Shown here in pieces: positions 5,651-48,361 of a stretch of 64,000 nt of DNA. The position numbers and the translations under genes are program-made. Location: positions 1-64,000 of the IMG/VR virus record IMGVR_UViG_3300050120_000361; one strand, given 5' to 3'. The notes under the pieces are model-generated. The model made no database searches. It was not told the origin of the DNA and saw only the letters and a list, made by a program, of their open reading frames with translations. Every line of letters starts with the position of its first letter. The stretch's first letter is position 1.

Positions 5651-5677
5651 GATTTGTCTTGTTTTCTTATATTGTAC

Positions 5678-5705
5678 ATATCCCATAAACGTCCGTATTA
5701 TAGGG
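5678..5705 (-). promoter_or_regulatory. phage promoter-like motif
   Basis: CCCTATAA-N13-GGGATAT. Confidence 0.75.
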
Positions 5706-5737: not shown

Positions 5738-6023
5738 GCGCACCGGTGCAACGGGCCTTTTTGACGGCACGCCTTGGCAAATGGCTTGGAATATCCCGAA
5801 AGTACCGTATTATTGCGTATTTTCCGGTGCGCCGGGTTGTTGCTCCCCATGGCTCGGGTGCGTCGAATTGAATGCCCGTAATGTATGGGTTTCAGTGGGA
5901 TATGCCATGTTTTGGGAACCTTTCAATTGTGCGCACCGGATATGGAGGCCATTCGGCCGTTATCCTTGGCAAATGCCTTTGCGGTTTTGTGGGAACCCCT
6001 TATTGTGGCATTGTCCGGTGCGC
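5738..6023. repeat. five-site inverted-repeat module A
   Basis: GCGCACCGG 5738, CCGGTGCGC 5824, CGGGTGCGT 5855, GCGCACCGG 5931, CCGGTGCGC 6015 (spacing 86/31/76/84). Confidence 0.9.
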
Positions 6024-6074
6024 ATTGGCGGAACGGGCAATAGAAAAGTCCCAATTGGGACTTGAATGCGAATG

Positions 6075-6354: not shown

Positions 6355-6448
6355 GCGCACCGGATACGGGACCAAAACAGGGGCTGTCCTTGACTAATGC
6401 CTTGCCAAACAGTTTGGCCTGCATTCTGACGATAAGTTTCCGGTGCGC
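6355..6448. repeat. single 94-bp inverted-repeat unit
   Basis: GCGCACCGG 6355, CCGGTGCGC 6440 (spacing 85); central AATGCCTTGCCAAAC. Confidence 0.9.
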
Positions 6449-6545: not shown

Positions 6546-6926
6546 TTATGCTACGACCAATTCGGCTTTTGCGGCTTTGGCTTTCGCCTTTGAAGCGCGG
6601 CTTGCCTTGTTGCGGGCCAAACGTGCTTTCTTTTCTTCAGGAGTTTCAACTTTTGCAACTGTTTCGATAACTTCAACCTTGTGGGTTACGGGAACGATTT
6701 TCGCAAGCATTGCGTCCTTAACGCTGTTGGTTGCGGCTTCGATGAACAGGCCCTTGAAAACAGGCAGTTCGATAACGTCTTCTGAACCAGCTTCGATACG
6801 GTCAGCGATTTCGAATGCAACGTCTTTTTTGATGCTCAAACGTTTTGCGGTTGCAACTACGAAGTTTAATTTTGCGCCGAATGATTTAGTTGAATACAAT
6901 GCGGCTGATTTGAATGATGCTTTCAT
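6546..6926 (-). CDS. small protein with Lys/Ala-rich C-terminal tail (putative DNA-binding)
   Basis: 126 aa; tail KKARLARNKASRASKAKAKAAKA; monocistronic. Confidence 0.7.
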   Translation of the reverse strand: MKASFKSAALYSTKSFGAKLNFVVATAKRLSIKKDVAFEIADRIEAGSEDVIELPVFKGLFIEAATNSVKDAMLAKIVPVTHKVEVIETVAKVETPEEKKARLARNKASRASKAKAKAAKAELVVA

Positions 6927-6979
6927 GATTTTAATTTTTTAAGTTTGTTTAAATAATTTGTTTGTTTCTTATGATAATT

Positions 6980-7007
6980 ATATCCTGAAAACCCAAACAA
7001 TATAGGG
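6980..7007 (-). promoter_or_regulatory. phage promoter-like motif
   Basis: CCCTATAT-N13-AGGATAT. Confidence 0.75.
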
Positions 7008-7041: not shown

Positions 7042-7329
7042 GCGCACCGGTACATCATGAATTATTGGTTGTATGCAGGGCATTTGGCAACCAATCCCGA
7101 ATACATGGCCTTTTCTGTTCCCAATACCGGTGCGTACGGTTGCGTACCAATAAGGTACTGGTGCGCGCGGTTGTATCGATTATTCAATGGGAATATCGGG
7201 CATTGCATGGCAAACGGAAACCAATTGCGTTCCATGCGCACCAGACAGTCATTGAATATCTGCCATTGACAAGGCATTATGCCTGATGGTTCCAATACGG
7301 TCCCAATACGGTCAACAGTGCCGGTGCGC
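7042..7329. repeat. five-site inverted-repeat module B
   Basis: sites at 7042(R), 7127(L), 7158(L), 7236(R), 7321(L); spacing 85/31/78/85. Confidence 0.9.
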
Positions 7330-7347: not shown

Positions 7348-7372
7348 AAAAAGCCCGACTTTCGTCGGGCTT
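7348..7372 (-). terminator. intrinsic terminator of 253-aa gene
   Basis: AAGCCCGAC-TTTC-GTCGGGCTT with sense-strand U tract. Confidence 0.75.
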
Positions 7373-7403: not shown

Positions 7404-8165
7404 TTACAACGCCTCGATTGCAACGGTTTGCTTAACCGAAAGAGGGATAAGGTATGCCTTCAATGAAGCGTTGCCGTCATTGGCATCCTTGAATTTGATT
7501 TTGGCCTCTTCGAAAGCCGCAACGGGAACGTCGTATATTTCGCCGTCGATTTGCAGCGGTTTTGTAACGACTTTGGTAGATAGCGGTTTGCGGGGTTTGT
7601 AGTAGGTTTTGGCGTAGCGTATACGGTCAATACCTGTTTGCATTTCGGCGATGATGTCAACCTCTTTGGCAAGTTCAACTTGCATGTAGACATCGGCAGC
7701 GTAGCCCTTAGCAGCGGCCTCGTCGTCAATCATTTTCTTGATTGCTGTACGGGCGGGCTTAACTTCCCACCATGAAGACAACAGCAACAGGAGAGGATTG
7801 ATTGATTGGCCTGCAATCTGAATGGTTGAGATAACCTTCAAACCGTCCAAAATCTTAGGCTCGCGCTCTTTGTCGTATTTGGACGATGCAACGGTCTCGT
7901 TGATATAGTCCAATGGGCTGTGAGCTTCCAACCATTCGCGGTCCGTGAACTGCGGAGTGTTTTCATCAACAACGTGCATTGACAAATTGCCTTGCGCGGC
8001 GTCTTCCAGGTCATTTCCAAGCTCGGGGTCAGCGGCGCCAGCGTTTGGCTGTTCGTTCTGAGCTCCTTCGTTTTGCTCGTTTTGTGCGCCTTCTTTGTTG
8101 GCTGCTACTGATTGGTTTTGTTGTGCTTTAGCGGCTTTTTCAGCGGCTCTGTTTTTGTTTGACAT
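7404..8165 (-). CDS. early paralogue-family protein (253 aa), acidic/disordered N-terminus
   Basis: C-terminal half aligns with 11584-12150 and 12210-12524. Confidence 0.8.
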   Translation of the reverse strand: MSNKNRAAEKAAKAQQNQSVAANKEGAQNEQNEGAQNEQPNAGAADPELGNDLEDAAQGNLSMHVVDENTPQFTDREWLEAHSPLDYINETVASSKYDKEREPKILDGLKVISTIQIAGQSINPLLLLLSSWWEVKPARTAIKKMIDDEAAAKGYAADVYMQVELAKEVDIIAEMQTGIDRIRYAKTYYKPRKPLSTKVVTKPLQIDGEIYDVPVAAFEEAKIKFKDANDGNASLKAYLIPLSVKQTVAIEAL

Positions 8166-8206
8166 GACTTTAATTTTTGGATTGATTAATTTGTTTCTTA
8201 TTTACT

Positions 8207-8235
8207 GTATCCCAAAAATGATGGAATTATAAGGG
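8207..8235 (-). promoter_or_regulatory. phage promoter-like motif
   Basis: CCCTTATAA-N13-GGGATAC. Confidence 0.7.
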
Positions 8236-8299
8236 ATTTGGAAAGTTTTTTCGTTTTGTTTTCGTTTAGATGTTCAAATCCTCATCGCTTATATTATAT

Positions 8300-8326
8300 A
8301 TATCCCAAAAAACGTTATTATATAGG
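8300..8326 (-). promoter_or_regulatory. phage promoter-like motif (tandem with 8207)
   Basis: CCTATAT-N13-GGGATAT. Confidence 0.75.
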
Positions 8327-8369
8327 AATATCGGAAACTTTGTGCTAATAGGCAGTTATGGACAGTCGC

Positions 8370-8657
8370 GCGCACCGGTTATTCGGCATATTTTAAGGTT
8401 GTGCAAGGCATTTATCCTCATGGCTTTCCTACACGGCATTCAATAAATAGTGTTCCGGTGCGCTTGGATGTTATAGTCTTTGCGGGCCGGTGCGCCGGGT
8501 TGAGCCTCCAAAACTGAAAAAGCCCCTGTTTCCCAAGCATTTTTGGCATACCGACAGCATCTATGCGCACCGGATATTATCCGATAATCCAGAAACCGTT
8601 GGCATTCATCAGGGCTTTAACAGTATTCGGAGGCTTCCGCAGGATTGTCCGGTGCGC
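8370..8657. repeat. five-site inverted-repeat module C
   Basis: sites at 8370(R), 8455(L), 8487(L), 8565(R), 8649(L); spacing 85/32/78/84. Confidence 0.9.
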
Positions 8658-8670
8658 ACAGCACAACAAA

Positions 8671-8699
8671 CCCTATAAGTATTGGCGTCCAACGGATAT
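8671..8699 (+). promoter_or_regulatory. phage promoter-like motif
   Basis: CCCTATAA-N14-CGGATAT, 13 bp from module C. Confidence 0.7.
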
Positions 8700-8722
8700 A
8701 ATTTCTGTTAAAACTTACGAAC

Positions 8723-8947
8723 ATGCAACAGCACACAACCTCAGAACTAATCGACCATTTGGCCCATATCATATATGATTTGGGATGGCCCATAGTAATA
8801 CCAATAATCATACTCGCTCTGGTGCTGATGGCTCTGGTGCGCGTACTGAGATTGATATTCAAAATCCCTATATTAACATGGATTTTCGGATATATAATAT
8901 ACAAGAGAACATCAAACAAAGACAAACAACCAAAATGGAAACAATAA
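8723..8947 (+). CDS. small membrane protein
   Basis: 74 aa, long hydrophobic stretch then basic tail. Confidence 0.65.
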   Translation: MQQHTTSELIDHLAHIIYDLGWPIVIPIIILALVLMALVRVLRLIFKIPILTWIFGYIIYKRTSNKDKQPKWKQ

Positions 8948-9180
8948 CCAAAATCGTAGACGGTCTGAAAGGCCAGCCAATCTACATACAAGCAGCAGCA
9001 ATCCTTTTCGCATTAGCGTTGGGACTTTTCATCGGATTGCTGCCAAAAGTGATACTCGTTGACATCATGGGATTGCCGTTCAATCCACCAAAACTGAAAT
9101 TCTTAGGGGCCAACAGAGCCCCTAAAATTTTGCCTGTTCGGAGCGTGCGCACCAGCGCACGCTCCCAGAGCATCGTGTAA
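8935..9180 (+). CDS. small membrane protein
   Basis: 81 aa from ATG 8935; one or two hydrophobic segments. Confidence 0.6.
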   Translation: METITKIVDGLKGQPIYIQAAAILFALALGLFIGLLPKVILVDIMGLPFNPPKLKFLGANRAPKILPVRSVRTSARSQSIV

Positions 9181-9238
9181 TTAAATTGCCTTGGCAAACG
9201 CCCGCAAATACGGCAATAATTGGAAATGCCCGGTGCGC
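9147..9238. repeat. single 92-bp inverted-repeat unit
   Basis: GCGCACCAG 9147, CCGGTGCGC 9230; central TTGCCTTGGCAAAC; left arm inside hairpin GAGCGTGCGC/GCGCACGCTC. Confidence 0.85.
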
Positions 9239-9253
9239 GTGAATGTCTTAAAT

Positions 9254-9281
9254 CCCTATCTTTTCGGCTTGCATGGGATAT
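9254..9281 (+). promoter_or_regulatory. phage promoter-like motif
   Basis: CCCTATCT-N13-GGGATAT. Confidence 0.7.
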
Positions 9282-9306
9282 AGGAAACTAAGAAACATAC
9301 AATAAC

Positions 9307-9582
9307 ATGGAAGACAACACGAAAACAGACAGCACCGAGCAAAAAGCTCAGGTGGAAATTGGGCCAATGCCCACGCTGCACGAGGACATGGTGCTCACTT
9401 GGCAGGAGGCCGACATGCTCGCCGCTTTCAGGCTGATGGGACTTACCCCAGAAACGGTGGTAGTCCTCATAAGGGGCACGATTGACATACTGTCAATAAG
9501 GACGGGCGGAACGGAGCAAATCAGGCTTCTTACCCAAAAGGAGAACCTCAGCTCACTGTTGAACCTTTTAACGGTAAAATAA
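9307..9582 (+). CDS. hypothetical protein
   Basis: 91 aa, follows promoter. Confidence 0.75.
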   Translation: MEDNTKTDSTEQKAQVEIGPMPTLHEDMVLTWQEADMLAAFRLMGLTPETVVVLIRGTIDILSIRTGGTEQIRLLTQKENLSSLLNLLTVK

Positions 9583-9998
9583 TGGAAAAGGTAAGAATAT
9601 CAAAGCACAAGACCCTCGGCTACATTGAAGTACAATTCGAGTTCGATGAGGAGAACGCCACGGGCAAGGAGGCCATAGTAAGGGGCATATCACAGCCTGG
9701 AAGCTACACCGTGAAGCAGAAGGACTACAAATCCTCTGAAATTGAGGTTGACTGCTGGGACGGGGTGTATGAAAAGGGCGTTGTGGCGCATCTCGCCAAG
9801 GGGCTCCTGCTGCTCGCCGTGGACCCAAATGACGGCATGATTGAGCACCTGCACCTGATGAACGTCAGGGCGATAAGGTGTCCAGCGAAGGGCGAGCGAA
9901 TACTGATTGAGTGGATTAACTACGCGCACATCGAGCAGAACCGCAAGACGTACGCCACGGACATCTGCATAGTCAACGAAACCCTCTGGAATGACTAA
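9582..9998 (+). CDS. hypothetical protein
   Basis: 138 aa, TAATG coupling. Confidence 0.75.
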   Translation: MEKVRISKHKTLGYIEVQFEFDEENATGKEAIVRGISQPGSYTVKQKDYKSSEIEVDCWDGVYEKGVVAHLAKGLLLLAVDPNDGMIEHLHLMNVRAIRCPAKGERILIEWINYAHIEQNRKTYATDICIVNETLWND

Positions 9999-10075
9999 AA
10001 TTGTGAAAATGACGGTAGACGCGATAGTCGTGGTCATACGTACGCTTTAAGACATGTTTTCTTATGTGTTGTCAA

Positions 10076-10120
10076 ATGCCTGCTGGTTAAAATCAGCGGG
10101 CTTTGTCCGTTAAAAAACAA
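10076..10120 (+). promoter_or_regulatory. cassette hairpin + linker
   Basis: GCCTGCTG/CAGCGGGC stem then TTTGTCCGTTAAAAAAC, like the 4496 element. Confidence 0.6.
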
Positions 10121-10129
10121 ACCATTAAA

Positions 10130-10651
10130 ATGAAAAAGACAAGACCATCGCACTTCACGAATTACCCGTGGAGCAGCGTAAAGCAGAAATCCGAATGGGA
10201 GTCGATAGCGCAGAACATCATGAGAGTGATGTCAGAGCACGGCAACGACTTCTCGATAGGCCTCAGCCTGGAACAGTACACCGCCTACAGGGAAAAGGAG
10301 GGCGGTTCGGTGCGCATCTCCCAAGAGAGTTTTGATGAACTTATGGAGTACTGCAAAAGCGCTGAAACGGCTAAGCTGTTCAGTAAGGACTGGAAAGACG
10401 GCGTGCACATGGAAGTATTCGGCAACGACGAAAAGACCTCCAATGAAGACCATAACTCTCGCGAGATAAGCGTTGTAATGACTGTTGGGAACCGCGGGCT
10501 CATTGAAGCCGCCTTGAACCATTACTGGAACGACGCCAACGCCAACCTGCAGCGCAGCGACCTGGGCGACCTTGAGCGCTTTATGTACGAAAAGACCAAG
10601 ACATCCACAAAGGAATTGCTAATGGTTATTGACCTAAACTGGTACCTGTAA
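10130..10651 (+). CDS. hypothetical protein
   Basis: 173 aa from ATG 10130; HFTNYPWSSV motif. Confidence 0.75.
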   Translation: MKKTRPSHFTNYPWSSVKQKSEWESIAQNIMRVMSEHGNDFSIGLSLEQYTAYREKEGGSVRISQESFDELMEYCKSAETAKLFSKDWKDGVHMEVFGNDEKTSNEDHNSREISVVMTVGNRGLIEAALNHYWNDANANLQRSDLGDLERFMYEKTKTSTKELLMVIDLNWYL

Positions 10652-10655
10652 ACAT

Positions 10656-11372
10656 ATGGAACTTTCAAAGAAAGAACAGGACCTGATGCTCAGAGCATTG
10701 GGTTTCCTCCGCAAGGCAATGGCGTGTTCGGAAGAGCAGGAAGACCTGGAAAACGAAAAGGCCCTGGCATCGATGATGGTTTCCGTTAAGGAGGCGCCAA
10801 CCTACGAGAGCACCTCGCGCTACCAGATAGCATCCTTCAAGGAGGACAAGCAACTGATGGTGATGCTCCACAGGGACCTGCTCGCGGCTCTGAAGCCTAT
10901 TGACAGGAAGTACGGCGTTAGGATAACTGGCGGAACGCTCAGGTATGAGGACAAGGGTTTCGGATTGCGCCTGCAGTGCGTGATACCAGCAGGGAGCATG
11001 GAACAGCTCGTAGCGGGGCTCCGCGAGGGCGACCAGTTCAAGCGCAAGGGCACCATATTCACGGTAACATCGATAGACCATCAAACAAAAAAGGTTTCGG
11101 CAATCACCGAGCGCAGGAAGCGGTACCTTGTAAGGTTCGACCAGCTGATGCAGATGATTAAGGTTGAGCGTTTCGCCGGCGGCGCGATGGCCTTTAAGGA
11201 GCTTCAGACATTCGTCAACGTTTCAGAGGCAACCAGGGATGTTGACCAATTGGACTTCGCGAACCTGCCCGTCGGGGACGGAAACGGTGAGATTGTCGTT
11301 GACGAGCCGCTAAAGAAGAAGCTCCTGATTAATGGCAAGCTTTGGAACGTGGACGACATAGAGGTTATCTGA
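10656..11372 (+). CDS. hypothetical protein
   Basis: 238 aa; ends DDIEVI. Confidence 0.8.
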   Translation: MELSKKEQDLMLRALGFLRKAMACSEEQEDLENEKALASMMVSVKEAPTYESTSRYQIASFKEDKQLMVMLHRDLLAALKPIDRKYGVRITGGTLRYEDKGFGLRLQCVIPAGSMEQLVAGLREGDQFKRKGTIFTVTSIDHQTKKVSAITERRKRYLVRFDQLMQMIKVERFAGGAMAFKELQTFVNVSEATRDVDQLDFANLPVGDGNGEIVVDEPLKKKLLINGKLWNVDDIEVI

Positions 11373-11397
11373 TAATTCAGACCAAATGAAAACGCTA

Positions 11398-11426
11398 GGG
11401 CCCGACGGAAATCCGTCGGGCCCTTT
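11398..11426 (+). terminator. terminator of plus-strand island
   Basis: GGGCCCGACGG-AAAT-CCGTCGGGCCC-TTT. Confidence 0.75.
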
Positions 11427-11517
11427 ACGTCTTGTTTAAATGCTGTAAACCAATTCTGATGAAGCCGTACAATTACATCACCAGTTAAGGTAAGGGGAAC
11501 CCTCGCGGTTCCCACCC

Positions 11518-11551
11518 AAAAAAGCCCTGTGGAATTTCCACAGGGCTTTTT
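11518..11551. terminator. bidirectional terminator
   Basis: AAAAAAGCCCTGTGGA-ATT-TCCACAGGGCTTTTT. Confidence 0.8.
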
Positions 11552-11583
11552 ATCATTCCGATTGAACGGGGCAGGTGGGGAGG

Positions 11584-12150
11584 TTACAATACCTCTACGC
11601 CTTCGTTCTTTTTGGTGTTCGGGTCTGCTAACAATGCAGCGCGTTTCGAAGCTGCGTCCATACCTGACAGTGATGCCAAGAAGTCTGCCGATACTTCGTA
11701 AAGGTCGCCGCTGATGCTTACCTGGATCAGTTTTGTTTTCGCGGTTGTTGCGCGACGGGCGTAGAATGATTTTACGTTGTTCAGCGTTGAAGCCGCTTTC
11801 TGCAAGCCATTGATAACTGCCAATTCTGTTTGGAAGTCGCCGTCGATGTAATTTTTGAACTCTTCCGAACCGCCGAAGCTTTCGATAACCGAAGCCTTAA
11901 CCGGAGCTGAAGCGTCTTTGTCATGCCATACCGGCACCAGGCTCAATACCTTCGCGAAGTTAGCGCTAACGCCGAACTCGTTGATTTTGGCAACTGCAGC
12001 TGTAAGGCCGGCAATTTCTTCAGGGGTTAATTCTTTCGGCTCTTTTGAGCTTTTCTTGGTTTCAGTACCTTCAGCCGGTGCTGTTGAAGTTTCCAAATCG
12101 GAAACGTTTAATTCCTGGTCTTCAGCAGGAGATTGTGCGTCGTTTGACAT
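11584..12150 (-). CDS. early paralogue-family protein (188 aa)
   Basis: aligns with 7404-8165. Confidence 0.8.
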   Translation of the reverse strand: MSNDAQSPAEDQELNVSDLETSTAPAEGTETKKSSKEPKELTPEEIAGLTAAVAKINEFGVSANFAKVLSLVPVWHDKDASAPVKASVIESFGGSEEFKNYIDGDFQTELAVINGLQKAASTLNNVKSFYARRATTAKTKLIQVSISGDLYEVSADFLASLSGMDAASKRAALLADPNTKKNEGVEVL

Positions 12151-12209
12151 GTTATTGGTGTTTAATGATTAATTAATTATTTTTGTTATCTCTTGTTATT
12201 CGGTATTTC

Positions 12210-12524
12210 CTATATCTCAAGGACTGGTGGGGCCGAGGCTATTATCTCATCGATGAGCTTTTGCTTGCTCTTCTCCGACTTCATCTCCTTCAGCCTCTCG
12301 TACATCACCAGGCTTATCGTGTAGTGTCTGCCCTTGAGGGTGACGGCTATGCTTCCTGTTGGCGTGCGTGGCTTCTTAGCCTTTTCCTCTTTGACTCGAG
12401 CAGTCTGTTCGGCAAGTTTTTGTTCGAGCTCGTTGAACTGGTCTATGTCGAGGTTGTTCCAATCAACCTGTGAAAAGTCGATTATTTCGGTTTCCTTTTG
12501 ACCTTGCGCATTTACGTTGCTCAT
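12210..12524 (-). CDS. early paralogue-family protein (104 aa)
   Basis: shares the C-terminal V-x-I/L-x-G-x2-Y module. Confidence 0.75.
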   Translation of the reverse strand: MSNVNAQGQKETEIIDFSQVDWNNLDIDQFNELEQKLAEQTARVKEEKAKKPRTPTGSIAVTLKGRHYTISLVMYERLKEMKSEKSKQKLIDEIIASAPPVLEI

Positions 12525-12578
12525 ATACAGGCCTCCTTACTTTCTCATGTTTTAATATGTTTTTCTCTTATGATTATA

Positions 12579-12606
12579 TTATCCTTGAAAAGGAATTAAT
12601 ATAGGG
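12579..12606 (-). promoter_or_regulatory. phage promoter-like motif
   Basis: CCCTATAT-N13-AGGATAA. Confidence 0.7.
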
Positions 12607-12690
12607 AGAATAGGGCAAAATGGCAAACTATTTTAAAATTGTCTTTGGACTGGATTTGCGTGGTATCGGGTCGGATATAGGCCGGACAGT

Positions 12691-13271: not shown

Positions 13272-14123
13272 TTATTGTCTAAATGGGCAAAGTAAACAGG
13301 CGTTTTGACACCTTATCGGGTTCGTGGCGGAAATCACGTTCACTATCGGCTTCCACCTGTTGTTGTTCTCGTATGTTATCAGTTTAGTTATGGTGCCGTC
13401 CCTTTCCGTCCATGAGTTGTTCAGGCCGAACGGAAGCAGTTCGCGCACGCCAATCAGGCTTTCTTCGCCCTTGTCGACCGTCAGTATGGCCTCATACTTC
13501 TTGAGGAGCTTGTAGTAGTCGCGCGTGAAGGACTCGGTCTTTATCAGGTAAGGCATTATTCCCTTGGTTGAGGGGCGCTTGTTTATGTTGTTGTTTGCCA
13601 CCATGTACTTGGTGGCACCCTTCTTCTTGAGGTATTCGGGCTGCGGCTTGTCGTCGGCGTACCTGTAGGAAAGCAGCTGGACCCGAAGGTTCCTGAGCCT
13701 GAGTATCTTGAACTCCGTGAAGACGCGCAGGAGCAGCTCAAGAGCCCTGAGCCCGTTGTCGTTGGACAGGACAGGGTTCACGAAAACCAGCACCTGCTTG
13801 GCCGGGAACCCTCCCCTTATGAGCTTTGCGAGCTGGAAGAACGTCTCCTTTACCGATGGGATGTTCGGCTCGAGCGTGGTTTTGCCCATGCCCGTAATGT
13901 TGACGTGCAGGTATATGCGGGCCTGCTCCCTTATGCAGAACTCCACGAAATCATCGCTGAGCCTCTTGGTGAGTATCACGTTTATCTCCGTAAGCTGGGG
14001 GACCCATGCAAAATTGACATTGCATGGGTCCCCAGACTTCCAGTAGGATATTGTTGGCCTGTCGCGCCACTCCCTTATGTTGGGGAGTTCGTTACGCTGC
14101 CTTAGTTCGCTGAGTGTCGCCAA
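13272..14123 (-). CDS. DUF1848/spore-photoproduct-lyase-like protein
   Basis: ILTK...YLHVNITGMG..LEPNIP...GFP...VNPV and terminal C-x3-C-x2-C (CQNACLLC). Confidence 0.5.
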   Translation of the reverse strand: MATLSELRQRNELPNIREWRDRPTISYWKSGDPCNVNFAWVPQLTEINVILTKRLSDDFVEFCIREQARIYLHVNITGMGKTTLEPNIPSVKETFFQLAKLIRGGFPAKQVLVFVNPVLSNDNGLRALELLLRVFTEFKILRLRNLRVQLLSYRYADDKPQPEYLKKKGATKYMVANNNINKRPSTKGIMPYLIKTESFTRDYYKLLKKYEAILTVDKGEESLIGVRELLPFGLNNSWTERDGTITKLITYENNNRWKPIVNVISATNPIRCQNACLLCPFRQ

Positions 14124-14649: not shown

Positions 14650-14680
14650 GGTAGTAAAATATTTAACTGTGATGTAAATT

Positions 14681-14707
14681 ATATCCTATGGCTTTGGATT
14701 GTATAGG
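14681..14707 (-). promoter_or_regulatory. phage promoter-like motif
   Basis: CCTATAC-N13-AGGATAT. Confidence 0.75.
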
Positions 14708-15703: not shown

Positions 15704-15730
15704 GATTTTTATGATTTATCGTTGCTCCAC

Positions 15731-15758
15731 ATATCCCATGGGATATGGTGTTATAGGG
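15731..15758 (-). promoter_or_regulatory. phage promoter-like motif
   Basis: CCCTATAA-N13-GGGATAT. Confidence 0.8.
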
Positions 15759-22399: not shown

Positions 22400-22427
22400 G
22401 GCTGTTTTGTTTTATTCGATAGATAAC

Positions 22428-22454
22428 ATATCCTGCGGAGCGGATATTTATAGG
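22428..22454 (-). promoter_or_regulatory. phage promoter-like motif
   Basis: CCTATAA-N13-AGGATAT. Confidence 0.8.
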
Positions 22455-28619: not shown

Positions 28620-30698
28620 CTATTGTTCTACCAGTCCTACCACGGAAGTGTACCCGTTCTCCCACTCCCGCTGCTGGTCTGGGTGCTGGTACGGGTTGAA
28701 CGCTATCCCGTTCTGTCCGTCCTCAACACCCTTGTTGAATGCTATGTCCTTGTACCTCTGGCCGTTCTTCTCGCCTATCCCCCACCCCTGCAGCCATATA
28801 GAGTGCTTGAGCGGCTCCAAAACAACATTGAACGGGTTCTCGTCATCGGTTATGTAGCCCTCTATGCCGGCCTCTATGATCTTCTCCTTCTCGCCGGGCT
28901 CCATTATCAATAGCTCGTCCTTTGCCCTCTCCTCAGCCAGCTGCCAGCCGTCGGCCCACAGCTCGAACTCTTCGGTTGACTTCGCCCTGTCATACGGGTT
29001 CTCGTTCTTGTTGGCGAGAGACTGCACGTAGGCGGTGAAGCCCTCGCACTCAGGGGGCTGAAGGTCCGACAGGCCCATAGTCCTCCTGACGCCCTTTTTA
29101 GGCAGCGTGTCCTCGGCGCGCAGAAGGGAGCATTCGTATATGAAGCCCTGGTCCCATGCCGCGGATGGAGTAAGCAGCCCCTTGCCCAAATCGTCGGTAT
29201 TGCCGAAAGGGTTCTGGTCGAGCGAGCCTCCGTGCTGCTTCCATATCCTGCCGCCCTCGAAGTGCCAGTTCATCTTGTCCTGGTAGCGGGCGTTCCTGCA
29301 GAGCTCTGACTTTGACGCGAGCAGCCACCCCTCCTCCCAGGCCTTAGCGGCCTCGTCGCTCGTGTATGGGTTGTCATCCAAGTCCTTACCCTCCGAGTAG
29401 GCGCCGTGCCCGGTGTGGAAGGCGTTCTCCTGGAACTGCGTGCGGTTGCCGGACTCCTGCTTGGTGTATGCCGCCAGGAACTCGTTGTGCCTGTCTTCCC
29501 AGCCGCGCGTCCATATAGCTATCCGCTCATCCCCGTCCAATGGGCATTCTGTGAGCTGCATTCCTTCAGCGTACTGCCTGCGCCCCATCTCGTACAGTGA
29601 GCTTTCGATAGGCCTTTCGCGCTTGGACTCCGTTTCCCTGCACACCGCATCTGCGGACTTCCAGCCAAGGTCCCACTCGCCCACGAAGCCTATGGCCTTT
29701 ATGGTTTTCATGAAGTCCTTGGCGTAAACCGTGTTCTCTACGAGGTGCGGGTTCGAGCACCTGCGCATGTCGTTGAAGCGGGCCTCGTATCCTGCCTGGA
29801 ACTGCTCAGGCGCGTCCTTTTCGTACACTGGAACCTCGCCAATCACCTTCTTCTCCATTGAGTCGAAACGCTCGGATATGTCCTTGTCGAAAAGTGAACG
29901 CTTTCCCCACCCGGCATTCCACGACTGCCATACGAATGTGTCCAAATCGGACTTGAAAGGCTCGTCACCGACACCGAATGGATTATCCGCTTTTGTAAGC
30001 CCCCTGTCGTACGCCCTCTTGCCCATGTCCCCACAAATAGTGCCAATCTCCCCAGCGGTTTTGTCATTGATGGCGTTCCACATATTCCTAAGCTGTCTGA
30101 GGGTCTTTATCTCCGAATTCGAGAAGGTGAACTCGATGCTGTCGGCGTCAACAAGCCCGATAAGAGGCGTTGCCTTTTTGGACATGAACTCCTTTTCCAT
30201 GGCGGAATTGTTGGCCACGTGCCATCCGTCAGCCCAGTTGGTGGCTGCGTTGTCCTTGGCGTCCGGCGTAACTATCCACGGATTGTCGGTAAGCGCCTTG
30301 CCGGCAACGAACGCCCGCTGGCCCTCATTGTACTGGTTCCCATTGTCCCACCCGATCGACCACATCTTCTGCATCATGCCAGGCCCGAATGGGTTCTTGA
30401 ACTTGTCAATGCCCGTAATAACGGCATCCTTCCAGCCACGAGCCTTGGCCTCGGCGTACTTCTCCTCATTCGCGTTGCGAGGGTTCTCGATGTCAAGCAC
30501 CACCTGACGCTCAACCACATCCGGCTGTATGCTTCCAGCTATCTGGTTCAGAATGTCCTGCTTTGAGTGCTCCATTATGCCGAGTATCTCGTATGGAGTG
30601 AACCCGTCGTTGCGGCGCTTGATGCTCATTGCGCCCTCGCCGTCCTCAACGCTCATGGTGTACACGCGCTTTTTGCTGTCCTTGTTTTCTTTGTCCAT
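28620..30698 (-). CDS. protein with 10 RMF/CrpP-like repeats
   Basis: 10x G-x(8-12)-[NC]P[FYW]-x(7-25)-W-x2-G[WFY]. Confidence 0.75.
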   Translation of the reverse strand: MDKENKDSKKRVYTMSVEDGEGAMSIKRRNDGFTPYEILGIMEHSKQDILNQIAGSIQPDVVERQVVLDIENPRNANEEKYAEAKARGWKDAVITGIDKFKNPFGPGMMQKMWSIGWDNGNQYNEGQRAFVAGKALTDNPWIVTPDAKDNAATNWADGWHVANNSAMEKEFMSKKATPLIGLVDADSIEFTFSNSEIKTLRQLRNMWNAINDKTAGEIGTICGDMGKRAYDRGLTKADNPFGVGDEPFKSDLDTFVWQSWNAGWGKRSLFDKDISERFDSMEKKVIGEVPVYEKDAPEQFQAGYEARFNDMRRCSNPHLVENTVYAKDFMKTIKAIGFVGEWDLGWKSADAVCRETESKRERPIESSLYEMGRRQYAEGMQLTECPLDGDERIAIWTRGWEDRHNEFLAAYTKQESGNRTQFQENAFHTGHGAYSEGKDLDDNPYTSDEAAKAWEEGWLLASKSELCRNARYQDKMNWHFEGGRIWKQHGGSLDQNPFGNTDDLGKGLLTPSAAWDQGFIYECSLLRAEDTLPKKGVRRTMGLSDLQPPECEGFTAYVQSLANKNENPYDRAKSTEEFELWADGWQLAEERAKDELLIMEPGEKEKIIEAGIEGYITDDENPFNVVLEPLKHSIWLQGWGIGEKNGQRYKDIAFNKGVEDGQNGIAFNPYQHPDQQREWENGYTSVVGLVEQ

Positions 30699-31255: not shown

Positions 31256-31284
31256 GTTCAATCGTGTTTTTTGTTGTAAATGAA

Positions 31285-31311
31285 ATATCCCGCAGACCAT
31301 GTAGTTATAGG
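31285..31311 (-). promoter_or_regulatory. phage promoter-like motif overlapped by an inverted repeat
   Basis: CCTATAA-N13-GGGATAT; CCCGCAGACC/GGTCTGCGGG arms. Confidence 0.75.
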
Positions 31312-41738: not shown

Positions 41739-44700
41739 TCAGTTTATGTCTATGTACATGGAACCCTTTTCTGAGGGGATTACTTGAAACGCATGAGTCT
41801 CGAACATCTGCTCGAGGTTGTGGTCTATTACAAAGAGGTTCTTGGACTCAAAGCGGTTCAGAAGCGTTATGAACATCTCCTGATAATTCACTATATTCTC
41901 CTTTTTAGAGAGTTCTTTGCCGCTGTTGAGCTGACCCGAGAGCTCGTCTATGAATATGCATGAAACACTGTTCTTGACATTCAGGGTGGATATGGCGTAT
42001 ATTAGCGCAAGTCCCTGGAATGCTGTTTCCATGCCTGATACGAGCTGAACCGGCCTGAATACGGCGTGGCCGTCTTTCATCTCCACCATGTAAAGCTCGC
42101 CGCTCTCGTCCCAGAACAGTTTGAAGCTGAGCCCCTCAAGCAGCAGGTTGAGCGTGTTGTTCAAAAAGCTCCTGTAGTAGTTGAACACTATGTCCTTAAA
42201 GTCCCGCTTGATGAGCTTCTCGTATATCGCAAAAACCATGGACTTGCGCTGCCACTCCACGTACTCTCTGATGAGCTTCTCATTGGACTCTATCTTGAGT
42301 TCGTGCCTTTGGAGCGCGAGGCTGTGCTGCGCCCGTTGCGTGTTCATGACCGACATTGACTCGTTTTCGTCTCGCTCATTCCTTTCTTGCTCGTCAAGCC
42401 CGGCCACCGCCTCATCCCACATAGGCTCCTTAAGCCTCAGGTTTTCAAGAGTGGATGCCTCCAAAGCGTGTGTCTGCTTCAGCTGGTCAATGCTACGGTT
42501 GTGCTCATCGACAGTGAGGTTGTGCCGGCGCACGGCGTCCAAGGCTTCGTTGTGCGTCTTTAGCCTGTCGCCGTATGACTTCAAATCCTTTGAGTACTTT
42601 TCCGTGGCTTCGGTTGCCGCCCTGACTATTTTCTCAATGCCCTGGTACAGCAGGGCCATCTTGTCTGATGAGTCCTTTGCGCCTTTGGTCCACATATCCA
42701 ATTTGGCCTTGGCACCGGCCTGCTCATCGAACACCAGCAGTGTGGCGTCCTTTCGCAGGGTCACCTCCCGAAGCGCGGCGAGCTTGGTAAGCCTTGCGGT
42801 AATCACGTCCAATTCGATGTACAGGTTCTCATCGGCGCTGTAGTCCTTCTTCTGCTCCTTAGCGGCTTCGGCCGTTGTTTTGAGCCTGTTCCACTTGTCC
42901 CTTGCAGTCACGGTCGCGACAGCCAATGGGCGTATCGCGTCATTGTAGGACGCGTGCTCAGCAAGCACTGTATTCCAGTCGCTTTCAGCCGAGGCCACGC
43001 TTGCAAGTATTCCGTAGGTGTCGACATGCGTCTTCGCCGCTGCGGCGAGGCTTTGCTGCTTTTCCAGTTCAGGAGTGATTTGCGTCAACTCTATCACTAT
43101 CGCCTCATTGTCGTCCTTTAGCCGCTGCTTGAGAACCTCCCAATGCCCGGCATCCCCTGATATTGGTTTATTGCAGGTGGGGCATATGCCCGACTCGAGC
43201 TGATTTTTGTTGGAAGACAGCCTGTCGCTGAGCGCTTTCTGCCTGTCCTTGATTTCCTGGACCTTCTCATTGAATGTCTTTTCCTTGGCCTGCAGGACTT
43301 CGTGCGTTTCCCTCACCGCATCGAGGTAAGCGCCACCTGCGGTGTCAAGCTCTATTTTTGCGGTTGCCGCTGCATTGGCGTAGTCCTGTTCGATGCGCCA
43401 GTACTCCTTTGTAACCTCCTCCCAGCCTCCGTCAATTTCCGCTTGTGTCTGCTTCTCGAGGATGTCCCACATGGCGGCTATGTCATCAGCGTATGCTTCA
43501 TTTACCGTCTTCAGCGCGCCTATTTCATCAGCAAGTATTTCAATCTCTTCCTTATCAGCTTCTTTGGTGTCAGGCTCAATTGGCTCGGTTTCAGTGAATA
43601 TCGGCTCTTCCCGCTTTTCCCTGCTTTCGAATGAGTCCACGGCCGCCTTGGCGTTATCCACCTTGACCTGCTGCTCCTTAATGAGCGTTGGCACGTTGCC
43701 CAATTCGAGCTTTTTCTGGTGGCCCTCGGCTATTGCCCGCCTTATGTGATTGAGCCTGTTTTCTGTGAATGCCTTGGAGTCGTCGAGCAGCTCAATTTTG
43801 TTCTGGGCGGCGTTCCTGTCGGCAATCGCCATTATTATCTCCTCCTTGAGCTGGGTCATGTTCACCTTTGGCTTAACGAGGTCGTAGTATGACTTGACCG
43901 ACGCGAGGTTGCCTTCAAGCACCTGCAGGTAGTCTACGCCTATGTAGTTCAGGACCATTTGGGTCAGCTCCGCGGGCGGCATGTTCAGCATCGACAGTAT
44001 CTTCGCCTGGTTCAGTATCATTATGGTATTCGGAACCTCACCGAACCATCTGTCCAATAGCTGCTGGGCCTCGTCGCCTATCTTCTCCACTGGCTCCGCG
44101 CCCTCCTTGTGAACCTGAAGCTTCAGGTTCCGCGTCACGCCGCTCACGTACTGCTTCCAATTCAGGGAGCGCTTCATCTCGTCTGTGGTGTTCTGCTTCC
44201 ACGCGCGCTGCGCCCAGCGTATCGCGTGCACCTTTGTGCCGTTTGCGCGGAATATGAGCCTTACCATTATGGTGTCAATCTCCGGAAGCTTGTCGTTGAA
44301 CAGGTGCAGTGAGTTCTGAACCTTCTTGGCCTTCGGCATGCCCTCCATTATCTCGTCCTTCAGCACCCACCGCAGCATATTGTACATGGTGGTCTTGCCT
44401 ATTCCATTGGTGCCGGTTATGCGTGTCAGTCCTGGTATGTTCAGCTTTATCTTGTTTTTGCCGAGGGCCATGAAGCAGTTGCACTCGATGCTCTCGAGCT
44501 CGTTCACGTAGTTTGAGGTCTTGGTCAATGAGTTCGAGAGTTGCTCAGAGAACAATTGCCTTATCTCGGCCAGTATCTCATTGACGTCCTCCTCCTCAAC
44601 GAACTCCTTCTCAATCGTTTTCTTGTGTCCTTCGAGCACCTTGACGAACAGTGCGTGCAGCTTGGCCTCATCGAGTACCATCTCATCCATGGTTTCTTCA

Positions 44701-45827
44701 GGCTCTTCACCCTCTCCTTCCGTAACGGCCTCAGTAGGTTGGACTTCGCTTTGGTTCATTACGAACTTGTCGTACTGGCAGTTAACTGAAACGGTTCCCA
44801 TCCGCTGCGAGCCGAGCTCGTGCGTCACGCGTATCAGTTCGAGCTCGTGCTTTGAGTAGGTGCTCGAGAGCTTGAACTTTATGAACGTGTTGCACGTTCC
44901 CCAAACGCTGTCGAGCCTGAGCACCGCGAGAACCTGCTGCAGCCAGTTCTCAGAAACCGATGAGGTAGTCATGTCGAACGTCACGTAGCTTATCAGGTTT
45001 GTAAGCGGCTCATCCCTTACGGTCCATGAGCCGTTCTCGATGTCTATTATCTTGACTACCTTTTGGTCGCCTACCGCCAGTCCGGGCTTGTTGCGGACCT
45101 TGGCGAATGTGCCCTCGGAGTGGTCGCGCTGTATAGGCGAGCCTGGATATATGAAGGTTTTGGACTTGTCGATGCTCTGGACCGTCCAGTTCACGTGAAT
45201 GTCCCCTGCGAGGGTAAGCGTGGAGAGGAAGTCCTCAACGGACGCGAGCCTCTCGTACCTGTCCTTCTTTACCGGAAGCTTTGTGGCGTCAACGTACTCC
45301 CGCAGAATGTCGTGGTACACGCATATGTTGAAGGTGTAGGGGTCTATGCCTTCCGCCTTGATGTTAGCCCCGTTTGACGGCCCGTCCTCCAAAGAGTAGG
45401 AAATCCATCCGAGCCCTTCAACCCGTGACCTGTAGTACCGCTGCTCCTTCAGGTAGGTCACCTTCTTGCTGAGCTCGGGCTCAAGCTTGTCTATGAACGA
45501 CTTGAACGTGTCAACGGCGTTGTGCCCCTTCTCGGCCTCAAGCGCCTTCCGCATGTCGTGAAGGTCGTGGTTGCCGTTCATTACGCAAATCTCAACCAGG
45601 GTGGGTATCGCAAGGCATTCTGACAGGTGGTTGTATATCGCCTTCTTCTCAGCGTCATTCGAGGCCGCATACTCCGTAAGGTCGCCGGCCAGCAGGTATA
45701 CCTCAACGCCCTCGCGAACGATAATGTCCCGTATCTCCGCAAGCACAGAGGCGTACGGCTTGGTCAGGTCCCGCTCGCGCAGCTTGACCTGGATGTCTGC
45801 TGTGTGCAGTATTCTTGTTTTCAGCAT
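41739..45827 (-). CDS. fused SbcD/Mre11 nuclease - SbcC/Rad50 ATPase (gp47-gp46-like)
   Basis: HTADIQ, AGDL, GNHD, AGDIH; GTNGIGKTT, coiled coil with CPTC hook, VSGME signature, FIDE Walker B. Confidence 0.9.
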   Translation of the reverse strand: MLKTRILHTADIQVKLRERDLTKPYASVLAEIRDIIVREGVEVYLLAGDLTEYAASNDAEKKAIYNHLSECLAIPTLVEICVMNGNHDLHDMRKALEAEKGHNAVDTFKSFIDKLEPELSKKVTYLKEQRYYRSRVEGLGWISYSLEDGPSNGANIKAEGIDPYTFNICVYHDILREYVDATKLPVKKDRYERLASVEDFLSTLTLAGDIHVNWTVQSIDKSKTFIYPGSPIQRDHSEGTFAKVRNKPGLAVGDQKVVKIIDIENGSWTVRDEPLTNLISYVTFDMTTSSVSENWLQQVLAVLRLDSVWGTCNTFIKFKLSSTYSKHELELIRVTHELGSQRMGTVSVNCQYDKFVMNQSEVQPTEAVTEGEGEEPEETMDEMVLDEAKLHALFVKVLEGHKKTIEKEFVEEEDVNEILAEIRQLFSEQLSNSLTKTSNYVNELESIECNCFMALGKNKIKLNIPGLTRITGTNGIGKTTMYNMLRWVLKDEIMEGMPKAKKVQNSLHLFNDKLPEIDTIMVRLIFRANGTKVHAIRWAQRAWKQNTTDEMKRSLNWKQYVSGVTRNLKLQVHKEGAEPVEKIGDEAQQLLDRWFGEVPNTIMILNQAKILSMLNMPPAELTQMVLNYIGVDYLQVLEGNLASVKSYYDLVKPKVNMTQLKEEIIMAIADRNAAQNKIELLDDSKAFTENRLNHIRRAIAEGHQKKLELGNVPTLIKEQQVKVDNAKAAVDSFESREKREEPIFTETEPIEPDTKEADKEEIEILADEIGALKTVNEAYADDIAAMWDILEKQTQAEIDGGWEEVTKEYWRIEQDYANAAATAKIELDTAGGAYLDAVRETHEVLQAKEKTFNEKVQEIKDRQKALSDRLSSNKNQLESGICPTCNKPISGDAGHWEVLKQRLKDDNEAIVIELTQITPELEKQQSLAAAAKTHVDTYGILASVASAESDWNTVLAEHASYNDAIRPLAVATVTARDKWNRLKTTAEAAKEQKKDYSADENLYIELDVITARLTKLAALREVTLRKDATLLVFDEQAGAKAKLDMWTKGAKDSSDKMALLYQGIEKIVRAATEATEKYSKDLKSYGDRLKTHNEALDAVRRHNLTVDEHNRSIDQLKQTHALEASTLENLRLKEPMWDEAVAGLDEQERNERDENESMSVMNTQRAQHSLALQRHELKIESNEKLIREYVEWQRKSMVFAIYEKLIKRDFKDIVFNYYRSFLNNTLNLLLEGLSFKLFWDESGELYMVEMKDGHAVFRPVQLVSGMETAFQGLALIYAISTLNVKNSVSCIFIDELSGQLNSGKELSKKENIVNYQEMFITLLNRFESKNLFVIDHNLEQMFETHAFQVIPSEKGSMYIDIN

Positions 45828-48310: not shown

Positions 48311-48361
48311 CGCTTTTGGATTTTGTTGTTTATGGTTTTTGTTAGTTACTTATTAGTATTC

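What the first reader, a model, noticed from the sequence alone, without database searches (positions are those of the whole stretch)
7404..12524. Three-member paralogue family with a shared C-terminal module and terminal hydrophobic-E-x-hydrophobic end
Seen: 253 aa (EVDIIAEMQTGIDRIRYAKTYYKPRK...KPLQIDGEIYDVP...AIEAL), 188 aa (ELAVINGLQKAASTLNNVKSFYARR...QVSISGDLYEVS...GVEVL) and 104 aa (KKPRTPTGSIAVTLKGRHYTIS...VLEI). The two longer ones also share LL-x3-W-x2-K and an acidic disordered N-terminus. The unrelated 238-aa plus-strand protein also ends IEVI. Inference: a hetero-oligomeric early complex, or a set of adaptors docking on one partner through the free C-terminus (host takeover, anti-defence, or the repeat-binding factor).
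Basis: partly seen in the sequence, partly recalled or inferred. Interest (0 to 1): 0.62.

Follow-up and report, generated by a model that had tools for sequence, protein, structure and literature searches.

The report
Phage protein trio sharing one C-terminal domain
Three neighbouring genes of an uncultured 208-kb phage really are relatives that end in the same small, undescribed domain and the same four-residue tail, and the trio is kept in every related phage checked, but what it binds or does is still unknown.

Summary
The three minus-strand ORFs (253, 188 and 104 aa) exist as described. The 253- and 188-aa proteins are paralogues from about residue 104/48 to the last residue (hhalign 97.8%, E 7e-13). 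The 104-aa protein shares only the last ~58 residues (92.8%, E 4e-7; decoys score at most 21 against 52). AlphaFold2 gives the 253- and 104-aa proteins the same C-terminal topology: basic linker, beta-hairpin, two helices, short tail.

A pooled domain profile finds 125 cluster representatives among 1.8 billion proteins. They fall into three length classes (45/39/36), and in the members of the three classes the domain sits at the extreme C-terminus. The tail [IV]-[ED]-x-[LFI]-COOH is strongly conserved; 176 of 178 members end in a hydrophobic residue. All six related contigs with enough sequence carry all three genes in the same order.

Pfam, PHROGs, NCBIfam, PDB sequence search, Foldseek and VIA-align give no match. 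Function is inferred only: most likely a docking or assembly module. The complex prediction gave no verdict. The 238-aa plus-strand protein is not a member.

Side finding: the 253-aa gene always lies within an array of conserved ~95-bp inverted-repeat elements.

The parts
7404..8165 (-). A1 paralogue (P0001, 253 aa). It has an acidic low-complexity N-terminus (aa 1-70) containing a short 'DLE' motif, a helical core (aa ~72-188, with the invariant WWEVKPAR stretch), and the C-terminal module.
   Evidence: ORF and translation. 25 orthologues. AF2 pLDDT 79, with residues 14-46 below 50. hhalign to the A2 family 97.8%.
7407..7598 (-). C-terminal module of A1 (aa 190-253): basic linker KPRK, hairpin 201-214, helices 215-224 and 231-242, tail ending IEAL.
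   Evidence: Secondary structure. Alignment A6. hhalign to the A3 family covers aa 189-253.
11584..12150 (-). A2 paralogue (P0002, 188 aa). It has an acidic N-terminus with the 'DLE' motif, a helical core homologous to that of A1, and the C-terminal module.
11587..11760 (-). C-terminal module of A2 (aa 131-188), tail ending VEVL.
   Evidence: Alignments A2 and A6. hhalign.
12210..12524 (-). A3 paralogue (P0003, 104 aa): an N-terminal helix (aa 27-48) followed by the module. Its family is basic (median pI 9.4). It lies 59 nt upstream of A2 with no promoter-like motif between, so the two are probably one transcript.
12213..12386 (-). C-terminal module of A3 (aa 47-104): hairpin 58-71, helices 72-80 and 84-97, tail ending VLEI.
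   Evidence: hhalign with the A1 family 92.8%, E 3.9e-7. Decoy controls.
8199..8328 (-). Two copies of a promoter-like motif (CCTATAt-N14-GGGATAT, then an AAGAAACAAA leader) upstream of A1.
   Evidence: Repeat family D1/D8. Sequence. 14 copies of the motif in the genome.
12553..12607 (-). The same promoter-like motif upstream of the A3-A2 pair.
   Evidence: Repeat family D1.
7351..7372 (-). Intrinsic-terminator-like hairpin with a T run, 32 nt after the A1 stop codon. A1 therefore looks monocistronic.
11519..11551 (.). Perfect 16-bp hairpin flanked by A and T runs, between the convergent A2 gene and the 238-aa gene. Probably a bidirectional terminator.
   Evidence: Inverted repeat I12.
13272..14123 (-). 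Conserved upstream neighbour of A3-A2 (283 aa), DUF1848-like, with a C-terminal CX3CX2C. It is listed as context and is not a family member.
   Evidence: Conserved next to A3-A2 in L004, L005 and L008. Protein-language-model hits to DUF1848, score 0.95. No Pfam HMM hit.
10656..11372 (+). The 238-aa protein ending IEVI. It is not a member of the family on present evidence.
   Evidence: BLAST not significant. Domain profile E 17. No relatives in the related loci or in viral contigs.

Best explanation
Shown: the three genes are an ancient triplication kept one-to-one-to-one in a clade of uncultured large phages. All three proteins end in the same ~60-residue unit: a basic linker, a beta-hairpin (x-I-x-I-x-G-x-x-Y-x-V), two helices, and a short tail ending [IV]-[ED]-x-[LFI]-COOH. 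The 253- and 188-aa proteins are paralogues over most of their length. They also share a helical core and a short 'G/D-L-E' motif in an otherwise variable acidic N-terminus. The 104-aa protein is a basic mini-version with only the module.

Inferred: the module with its free acidic-hydrophobic tail is a protein-docking unit. It would bring three different N-terminal parts to one common partner, in the way the acidic C-terminal tips of bacterial SSB, or of T7 gp2.5 and gp4, bind a pocket on their partners. The genes are driven by the same promoter-like motif as many genes of the replication and nucleotide-metabolism arm, so the partner is most likely part of the phage's DNA or RNA machinery. The partner itself is not identified.
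For: Homology and topology:
- Profile comparisons and decoy controls.
- Reciprocal HMM cross-hits in the same register.
- The same hairpin-helix-helix end in two AF2 models.

Distribution:
- 125 representatives fall into three length classes of 45/39/36; in those three classes the module lies at the extreme C-terminus.
- All three genes occur, with A3 directly before A2 and A1 5-14 kb further on, in the window, the 196-kb JGI contig, L004, L005, L008 and the contig of L007.

Docking idea:
- The tail is the best-conserved feature shared across the three families.
- The last residues have low model confidence (pLDDT 48-64), as expected of an exposed peptide.
- A second short motif in the disordered N-terminus is shared by the two long families: 47/72 and 44/60 members, against about 10 and 14 in shuffles. 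Two such motifs around a folded core is the layout of an adaptor.
- The shared promoter-like motif.
Against: No partner was found, and no binding of any kind has been shown.
- The three-chain complex prediction gave no verdict.
- The module can occur without a free end: as the first of two tandem copies in 150-155-aa phage proteins, and as 5-7 internal repeats in secreted proteins. The domain therefore does not need the tail, and the tail may serve folding or self-association instead.
- In both models a residue of the tail region makes a beta-bridge back to the domain, so the tail may pack in cis.
- No sliding-clamp gene, one obvious hub for C-terminal peptides, was detected in the genome.
- The deeper alignments were recruited with a pooled profile, which may slightly inflate the A1-A3 score.
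Confidence: 0.38

Rival explanations
1. The module is a self-association domain. The three paralogues would form homo- or hetero-oligomers, for example by the tail of one subunit adding a strand to the hairpin of the next, giving one multi-subunit complex.
For: - Strict 1:1:1 retention and the A3-A2 adjacency.
- Co-conservation of hairpin and tail.
- A beta-bridge between tail region and domain in the models.
- Tandem two-module proteins exist.
Against: The complex prediction of the three proteins did not reach the mark (0.11 against 0.32), which counts as no verdict. No coevolution or interface data exist. The internal repeats in secreted proteins lack tails.
Confidence: 0.24
2. The basic linker plus hairpin-helix-helix unit binds nucleic acid. 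The trio, or at least the 253-aa and the basic 104-aa proteins, would recognise the conserved ~95-bp inverted-repeat elements that surround the 253-aa gene, forming a phage-specific nucleoprotein array.
For: - The A1-family gene is embedded in 3-8 such elements in the window and in all seven related loci.
- The elements lie between a terminator and the next promoter-like motif, so they look like DNA sites rather than RNA.
- A basic stretch precedes the hairpin in all three families.
- The A3 family is basic: median pI 9.4, module net charge +8.
Against: - The A1 and A2 proteins are acidic overall (median pI 5.5 and 5.2), with near-neutral modules.
- There is no HMM or fold match to any DNA-binding family.
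- The polar residues of the hairpin differ between the three families.
- The A3-A2 pair has no elements nearby.
- Co-location is only circumstantial.
Confidence: 0.18
3. The proteins are packaged or ejected virion cargo, and the conserved C-terminus is a targeting or processing signal.
For: Disordered acidic N-termini, conserved termini and monocistronic, apparently strongly promoted genes.
Against: The genes lie in the minus-strand arm with replication-type genes, not in the plus-strand arm. There is no similarity to known cargo or scaffold proteins. No proteome data exist.
Confidence: 0.07
4. The 104-aa protein only resembles the other two by chance (a short basic, hairpin-like motif), so the family has two members.
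For: Pairwise BLAST is not significant. First-round hhalign probabilities were only 10-12%. The A2-A3 comparison remains at 50%.
Against: - The deeper A1-A3 comparison gives 92.8-95%, E 1e-7 to 1e-8, end to end, against decoys of at most 21.4.
- Cross-hits fall in one register in several phages.
- Predicted topology and module length are identical.
- The tail is the same.
- Linkage to A2 is conserved.
Confidence: 0.05

Closest known systems
Acidic C-terminal tips that dock on partners: E. coli SSB-Ct (DDDIPF-COOH) and T7 gp2.5 and gp4 binding T7 DNA polymerase (established knowledge, not tested here)
   Same: A conserved acidic-then-hydrophobic extreme C-terminus whose last residue is L/F/I. 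It is shared by several proteins of one genome and predicted with low confidence, so it may be flexible.
   Different: There is no OB fold and no sequence or fold similarity, and the partner is unknown. Here the tail follows a small folded domain rather than a long disordered linker.
Clamp-binding C-terminal peptides of T4 gp43, gp33 and gp55, which bind the gp45 clamp (established knowledge)
   Same: Several unrelated or related proteins are tethered to one ring-shaped hub by a free C-terminal peptide.
   Different: No gp45-like or beta-clamp gene was detected in this genome. The tail does not match the bacterial clamp-binding consensus.
Ribbon-helix-helix (Arc/MetJ/CopG) and other small strand-plus-two-helix DNA-binding modules
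   Same: A basic segment, then beta structure, then two short helices, in about 45 residues. The 104-aa family is basic.
   Different: The model has a beta-hairpin rather than the single strand that pairs across a dimer. No Pfam hit and no fold match were found.
KTSC domain (PF13619; PDB 7x8c)
   Same: A weak structural match of the module of P0003: Z 3.4, rmsd 3.2 over 46 residues. A KTSC protein also appears low in the viral fold list. By eye both share a G-x-x-Y hairpin-then-helix pattern.
   Different: Z is far below significance. The KTSC HMM finds nothing in this genome even at E 10.
Secreted tandem-repeat proteins from metagenomes or transcript-like contigs (P0059, P0089, P0154); JGI labels one 'YlzI (FlbEa/FlbD family)'
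   Same: Their 45-55-residue repeat unit aligns with the hairpin and both helices of the A2 module (hhalign 96.6%, E 5e-10). Whole-library E-values run from 2e-14 to 9e-5.
   Different: They carry a signal peptide and 5-7 internal copies, with no terminal tail. They have no Pfam FlbD match, and the FlbD HMM finds nothing in this genome. Their function is also unknown.

Membership tests
Ribbon-helix-helix superfamily | Sequence match to an RHH family model (CopG, Arc, MetJ and similar) | tested here: not met
   No such family at E <= 1 in Pfam for P0001-P0003. None in NCBIfam.
Ribbon-helix-helix superfamily | A single N-terminal strand followed by two helices, with fold similarity to solved RHH dimers | tested here: not met
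   The models show a two-stranded hairpin before the helices. No RHH chain appears among the Foldseek or VIA-align matches, where the best Z for the module region is 3.4. The isolated module was not folded alone.
KTSC domain (PF13619) | Match to the Pfam model | tested here: not met
   No match in the whole genome at E <= 10. No match in the Pfam scan.
KTSC domain (PF13619) | Fold similarity to a solved KTSC protein | tested here: inconclusive
   7x8c_A: Z 3.4, rmsd 3.2, 46 residues aligned. This lies within the noise of that search.
FlbD/YlzI (PF06289) | Match to the Pfam model | tested here: not met
   No match in the genome at E <= 10. P0089, which JGI names so, has no Pfam FlbD hit.
SSB-Ct / T7 gp2.5-type C-terminal docking tail (a mechanism class, not a sequence family) | A conserved acidic residue or residues and a hydrophobic last residue at the free C-terminus | tested here: met
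   Last residue hydrophobic in 176/178 members. Position -3 is E/D in 61/72, 53/60 and about 24/46. Position -4 is I/V in about 85%.
SSB-Ct / T7 gp2.5-type C-terminal docking tail (a mechanism class, not a sequence family) | The tail binds a pocket on a defined partner protein | not testable with these tools
   No partner is known. The only complex job, among the three paralogues, gave no verdict.
SSB-Ct / T7 gp2.5-type C-terminal docking tail (a mechanism class, not a sequence family) | An OB-fold single-strand DNA-binding body | tested here: not met
   The models are helical plus a hairpin-helix-helix end. No SSB family hits were found.
Any described phage protein family (PHROGs) | A significant match to a PHROG | tested here: not met
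   The best E-values are 0.038, 0.22 and 0.092, all to PHROGs of unknown function.

The most novel reading that the evidence does not exclude
The trio and the array of conserved ~95-bp symmetric elements around the 253-aa gene would be two halves of one undescribed phage system. Each element has an outer inverted repeat with a CACC-R-G core and a central CAAGRCAT-ATGYCTTG-type palindrome. The hairpin-helix-helix domain would bind these sites, and the free C-terminal tails would recruit or bridge partners. Together they would build a nucleoprotein structure such as an origin, a partition or centromere-like site, or a genome-organising array.
Probability: 0.12. Interest if true: 0.7.

Novelty: new variant of a known kind. 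Interest (0 to 1): 0.42.

Why it matters
This defines an undescribed domain family. It has about 125 clusters at 50% identity, is absent from Pfam, PHROGs and NCBIfam, and has no fold match. It is kept as a fixed trio in a clade of uncultured large phages that is only distantly related (helicase ~30% identity) to phages PAU, PTm1 and MA9V.

The sharply conserved free C-terminus and the second motif at the N-terminus give direct handles for experiments: truncation, peptide pull-down, and in-silico partner screens.

If the link to the symmetric intergenic elements holds, the locus would be a new kind of phage nucleoprotein system. If not, it is one more conserved family of unknown function, worth a family entry but not surprising.

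Tried and rejected
- **Family libraries.** Pfam, PHROGs and NCBIfam scans of the three proteins, their neighbours and 30 family members gave nothing.
- **PDB by sequence.** Profiles found only compositional hits: eL19, and Cag3 at E 0.25.
- **Fold searches.** Foldseek PDB, Foldseek BFVD, VIA-align wide, VIA-align second look and the ESM Atlas shape search gave nothing above noise. Best Z was 4.5 for P0001 and 3.8 for P0003; Atlas TM was at most 0.38. The module was never folded alone, so 'no known fold' is not proven.
- **Protein atlas by features.** No usable hit for P0001.
- **Complex prediction.** P0001 95-253 + P0002 45-188 + P0003 gave no verdict, score 0.11. This is neither for nor against binding.
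- **Phage collections.** megablast and tblastn found no match. The A1 profile has no match in PAU, PTm1, pT24, MA9V-2 or LR756500. One genome search failed.
- **Specific HMMs on this genome.** KTSC, FlbD, gp45 and beta-clamp models found nothing.
- **P0004 as a fourth member.** Rejected.
- **'Near the genome end, so early'.** Rejected. The direct terminal repeat is a 127-bp exact overlap typical of a circular assembly. GC skew is uninformative.
- **The ~95-nt elements as RNA.** No tRNA, no Rfam family, and no conserved inner fold; only the outer stem is conserved.
- **Literature.** The search for KTSC returned nothing relevant.
- **Genetic code and sequence restrictions.** Only genetic code 11 was used.


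Full report
**Where the window lies.** The window is the first 64 kb of a 208,538-bp IMG/VR virus record. Its 'direct terminal repeat' is an exact 127-bp overlap, which is the signature of a circular assembly, so coordinates near 1 carry no biological meaning. AT skew shows a minus-strand arm (about 1-106 kb) and a plus-strand arm (about 106-208 kb). The minus arm carries replication-type genes: helicases, an NAD-dependent ligase, an SbcCD-like fusion and a BCS1-like AAA protein. The nearest cultured phages by helicase are Sphingomonas phage PAU, Tenacibaculum phages PTm1 and pT24, and Chryseobacterium phages MA9V-1 and MA9V-2, at about 26-30% identity.

**The observation.** I call them A1 (P0001, 253 aa, 7404-8165), A2 (P0002, 188 aa, 11584-12150), A3 (P0003, 104 aa, 12210-12524) and P0004 (238 aa, plus strand). 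Pairwise BLAST alone would not carry the claim: A1-A2 gives E 0.007 and the pairs with A3 are not significant.

Each protein has its own set of orthologues in metagenomes: 25, 21 and 6. With these first alignments:
- hhalign gave A1-A2 83.9% (E 7.7e-6);
- A1-A3 gave E 0.0026 and A2-A3 gave E 0.0034;
- all three comparisons fell in one register: basic stretch, x-I-x-I-x-G-x-x-Y-x-V, then a helix.

HMM searches of all ORFs of the genome and of seven related loci gave reciprocal cross-hits in the same register. A1 and A2 hit each other at 1e-5 to 1e-7, and the A1 or A2 models hit A3 members at 0.007-0.02.

After recruiting more members (below), the deeper alignments gave:
- A1-A2: 97.8%, E 7.2e-13 over 137 columns, P0001 104-253 against P0002 48-188, to the last residue;
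- A1-A3: 92.8%, E 3.9e-7 over 57 columns, P0001 189-253 against P0003 47-104;
- A2-A3: 50.5%, E 1.6e-4.

Reversed and 30 column-shuffled decoys of the A3 alignment never exceeded score 21.4, against 52.2 for the real comparison. One caveat applies. The extra members were found with a pooled profile of all three families, which could favour consensus-like sequences. Each was, however, assigned to its family at E < 1e-10 by models built before pooling.

**Predicted structure.** AlphaFold2 on the A1 alignment gave mean pLDDT 79, and on the A3 alignment 73. Both models end in the same order of elements:
- a long helix;
- a basic linker;
- a hairpin (201-206/209-214 in A1; 58-63/66-71 in A3);
- helix 1 (215-224; 72-80);
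- helix 2 (231-242; 84-97);
- one short beta-bridge, then a low-confidence tail.

From the hairpin glycine to the C-terminus there are 40-43 residues in all three families.

**Distribution.** A 62-position profile of the module (alignment A6) found 125 representatives at E <= 0.001 among 1.84 billion proteins. Classified with the family models they split into 45 A1-like (about 190-297 aa), 39 A2-like (160-193 aa, apart from two secreted repeat proteins that score best against the A2 model) and 36 A3-like (71-119 aa). In the members of these three classes the module lies at the very end of the protein.

Exceptions are informative:
- 150-155-aa phage proteins with two modules in tandem (P0058, and L007 8676-9143, next to the A1 gene);
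- a 70-aa protein that is little more than the module (P0085);
- a 150-aa protein with another N-terminal part (P0137);
- three secreted proteins with 5-7 internal repeats. Their repeat unit aligns with the A2 module at 96.6%, E 5e-10. One lies on a 1.6-kb single-ORF, transcript-like contig.

So the hairpin-helix-helix unit is an autonomous domain that can exist without a free end.

**Synteny.** A3 directly precedes A2, and A1 lies 5-14 kb further on in the same direction. This holds in the window, the 196-kb JGI contig, L004, L005, L008 and the contig of L007. The other contigs are too short upstream to judge. A 283-aa DUF1848-like gene sits upstream of A3-A2 in the window (13272-14123) and in L004, L005 and L008. 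The cultured PAU-like phages have no A1 relative.

**The termini.** Over 178 family members:
- the last residue is hydrophobic in 176 (L, then F or I);
- position -4 is I/V in about 85%;
- position -3 is E/D in 61/72 (A1), 53/60 (A2) and about 24/46 (A3).

The pattern hydrophobic-[DE]-x-hydrophobic at the end occurs in 8 of 348 long ORFs of the same genome, family members included.

A1 and A2 are therefore paralogues along nearly their whole length, with conserved short motifs at both ends.

The A1 and A2 proteins are acidic (median pI 5.5 and 5.2). A3 is basic (median pI 9.4, module charge +8).

**P0004.** The IEVI end of P0004 matches the tail pattern, and a hairpin-like 'LLINGKLWNV' precedes it. 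However, the module profile scores it at E 17. BLAST is not significant. No relatives were found in the related loci or in viral contigs, so conservation cannot be judged. About 2% of ORFs show the pattern by chance, so one such neighbour is unremarkable. It is not counted as a member.

**Expression signals.** A 55-nt promoter-like motif (CCTATAt-N14-GGGATAT, followed by an AAGAAACAAA leader) lies upstream of A1 (two copies), of A3-A2, of the 126-aa gene after A1, and in inverted orientation before the plus-strand island that ends with P0004. The motif has 14 copies in the genome, mostly in the minus-strand arm, so it is a general promoter class and not specific to the trio. A1 is followed by an intrinsic terminator (7372-7351). 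A2 is followed by a perfect bidirectional hairpin (11519-11551).

**Comparison with known families.** Pfam, PHROGs and NCBIfam give no match. PDB sequence profiles give none. Foldseek against PDB and BFVD, VIA-align against 48,161 chains, a second look at Foldseek's list, and the ESM Atlas give no fold match.

Three leads were tested and not met:
- ribbon-helix-helix: the models have a hairpin rather than a single strand, and no match was found;
- KTSC: Z 3.4 only, and no HMM hit;
- FlbD/YlzI: a JGI label on one repeat protein, with no HMM hit.

The module was not folded on its own, so I do not claim a new fold.

**How it most likely works.** The evolutionary and architectural picture above is shown. 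Its role is inferred. I favour a docking module (confidence about 0.38). Across three diverged families the most conserved shared feature is a free acidic-hydrophobic C-terminus, and the two long paralogues add a second short motif in a disordered N-terminus. That is the layout of adaptors such as SSB-Ct or T7 gp2.5 and gp4 (established knowledge). Partner and pocket are unknown, and no phage clamp gene was found.

The main rival is self-assembly into homo- or hetero-oligomers through the module (0.24). The one complex prediction gave no verdict and is not evidence either way.

The second rival is nucleic-acid binding (0.18). It rests on the basic linker, the basic A3 family, and the striking genomic company of A1 described next.

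**Side finding.** Eight ~92-95-bp elements lie between 5.7 and 9.3 kb. Each is bounded by GCGCACCGG...CCGGTGCGC at a fixed 83-87-bp spacing, and most have a central near-palindrome (for example CAAGGCATTATGCCTG). The exact 9-mers occur nowhere else in the 208-kb genome.

Every related locus (L002-L008) has 3-7 equivalent elements flanking the A1 gene and the next few genes. The outer repeat varies from phage to phage around a CACC-R-G core. The central CAAGRCAT-ATGYCTTG-type palindrome recurs across phages of very different base composition.

In the window the elements sit between a terminator and the next promoter-like motif. They show no conserved inner RNA fold, no Rfam match and no tRNA. 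They look like DNA-level sites. Whether the trio binds them is untested.

**Verdict.** This is an undescribed but otherwise ordinary-looking conserved phage family with unusually clear handles for experiment. The link to the symmetric elements is the part that could make it more than that.

Noticed in passing
window 5738-5832, 5930-6024, 6355-6448, 7043-7134, 7236-7329, 8370-8463, 8564-8658, 9147-9238; also L002-L008 around the A1 gene: Eight ~92-95-bp symmetric elements, each with an outer 9-bp inverted repeat GCGCACCGG/CCGGTGCGC at fixed spacing and a central near-palindrome. They are confined to this 3.5-kb stretch of the genome. Equivalent elements (3-7 per locus) flank the A1-family gene in all seven related loci; their outer repeat varies around a CACC-R-G core. 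They lie between terminators and the next promoters, have no Rfam or tRNA match, and show no conserved inner RNA fold.
   Followed up: partly
window 5677-5704, 6979-7006, 8299-8326, 8672-8700, 8867-8894, 9255-9282, 12553-12607, 14680-14707, 15730-15757, 22427-22454, 31284-31311, 48361-48389: A promoter-like motif, CCTATAt-N14-GGGATAT, followed by an AAGAAACAAA-type leader, lies upstream of many genes. A pattern search finds 14 copies in the genome; the 12553-12607 copy is more diverged and was found by the repeat search. It is probably a phage-specific promoter class.
   Followed up: partly
window 13272-14123 (-): A 283-aa protein ending in a CX3CX2C cysteine cluster. It is DUF1848-like by protein-language-model features (score 0.95) but below Pfam HMM detection. 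It is conserved upstream of the A3-A2 pair in three related phages.
   Followed up: partly
window 28620-30698 (-): A 692-aa ORF with a strong match to the ribosome modulation factor domain (PF04957, E 8e-23, aa 425-458) embedded in a much larger protein. This is an unusual context for RMF.
   Followed up: no
window 6546-6926 (-): The 126-aa protein after A1 has its own promoter-like motif and a Lys/Ala-rich, histone-H1-like C-terminal tail. It has no family match, and the gene at this position is not conserved in sequence among relatives.
   Followed up: partly
window 41739-45827 (-) and 53590-54930 (-): A 1362-aa fusion of a calcineurin-like phosphoesterase with an SMC/RecF-type ATPase (SbcCD-like, in one polypeptide), and a BCS1-like AAA protein with a BCS1 N-terminal domain.
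   Followed up: no
proteins P0059, P0089, P0154 (L018 for P0059): Secreted proteins from short, transcript-like contigs carry 5-7 tandem copies of a unit related to the module's hairpin and two helices (E-V-S-I-N-G-V-S-Y-L-V-D... repeats). Their origin and function are unknown.
   Followed up: partly
L007 8676-9143 (-), and P0058: 150-155-aa phage proteins with two tandem copies of the module after a basic, repetitive N-terminus. They are encoded next to the A1 gene, inside the element array.
   Followed up: partly
window 8935-9180 (+): A small plus-strand ORF with a predicted hydrophobic, membrane-like segment. It sits behind an inverted copy of the promoter-like motif and overlaps element 9147-9238.
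   Followed up: no
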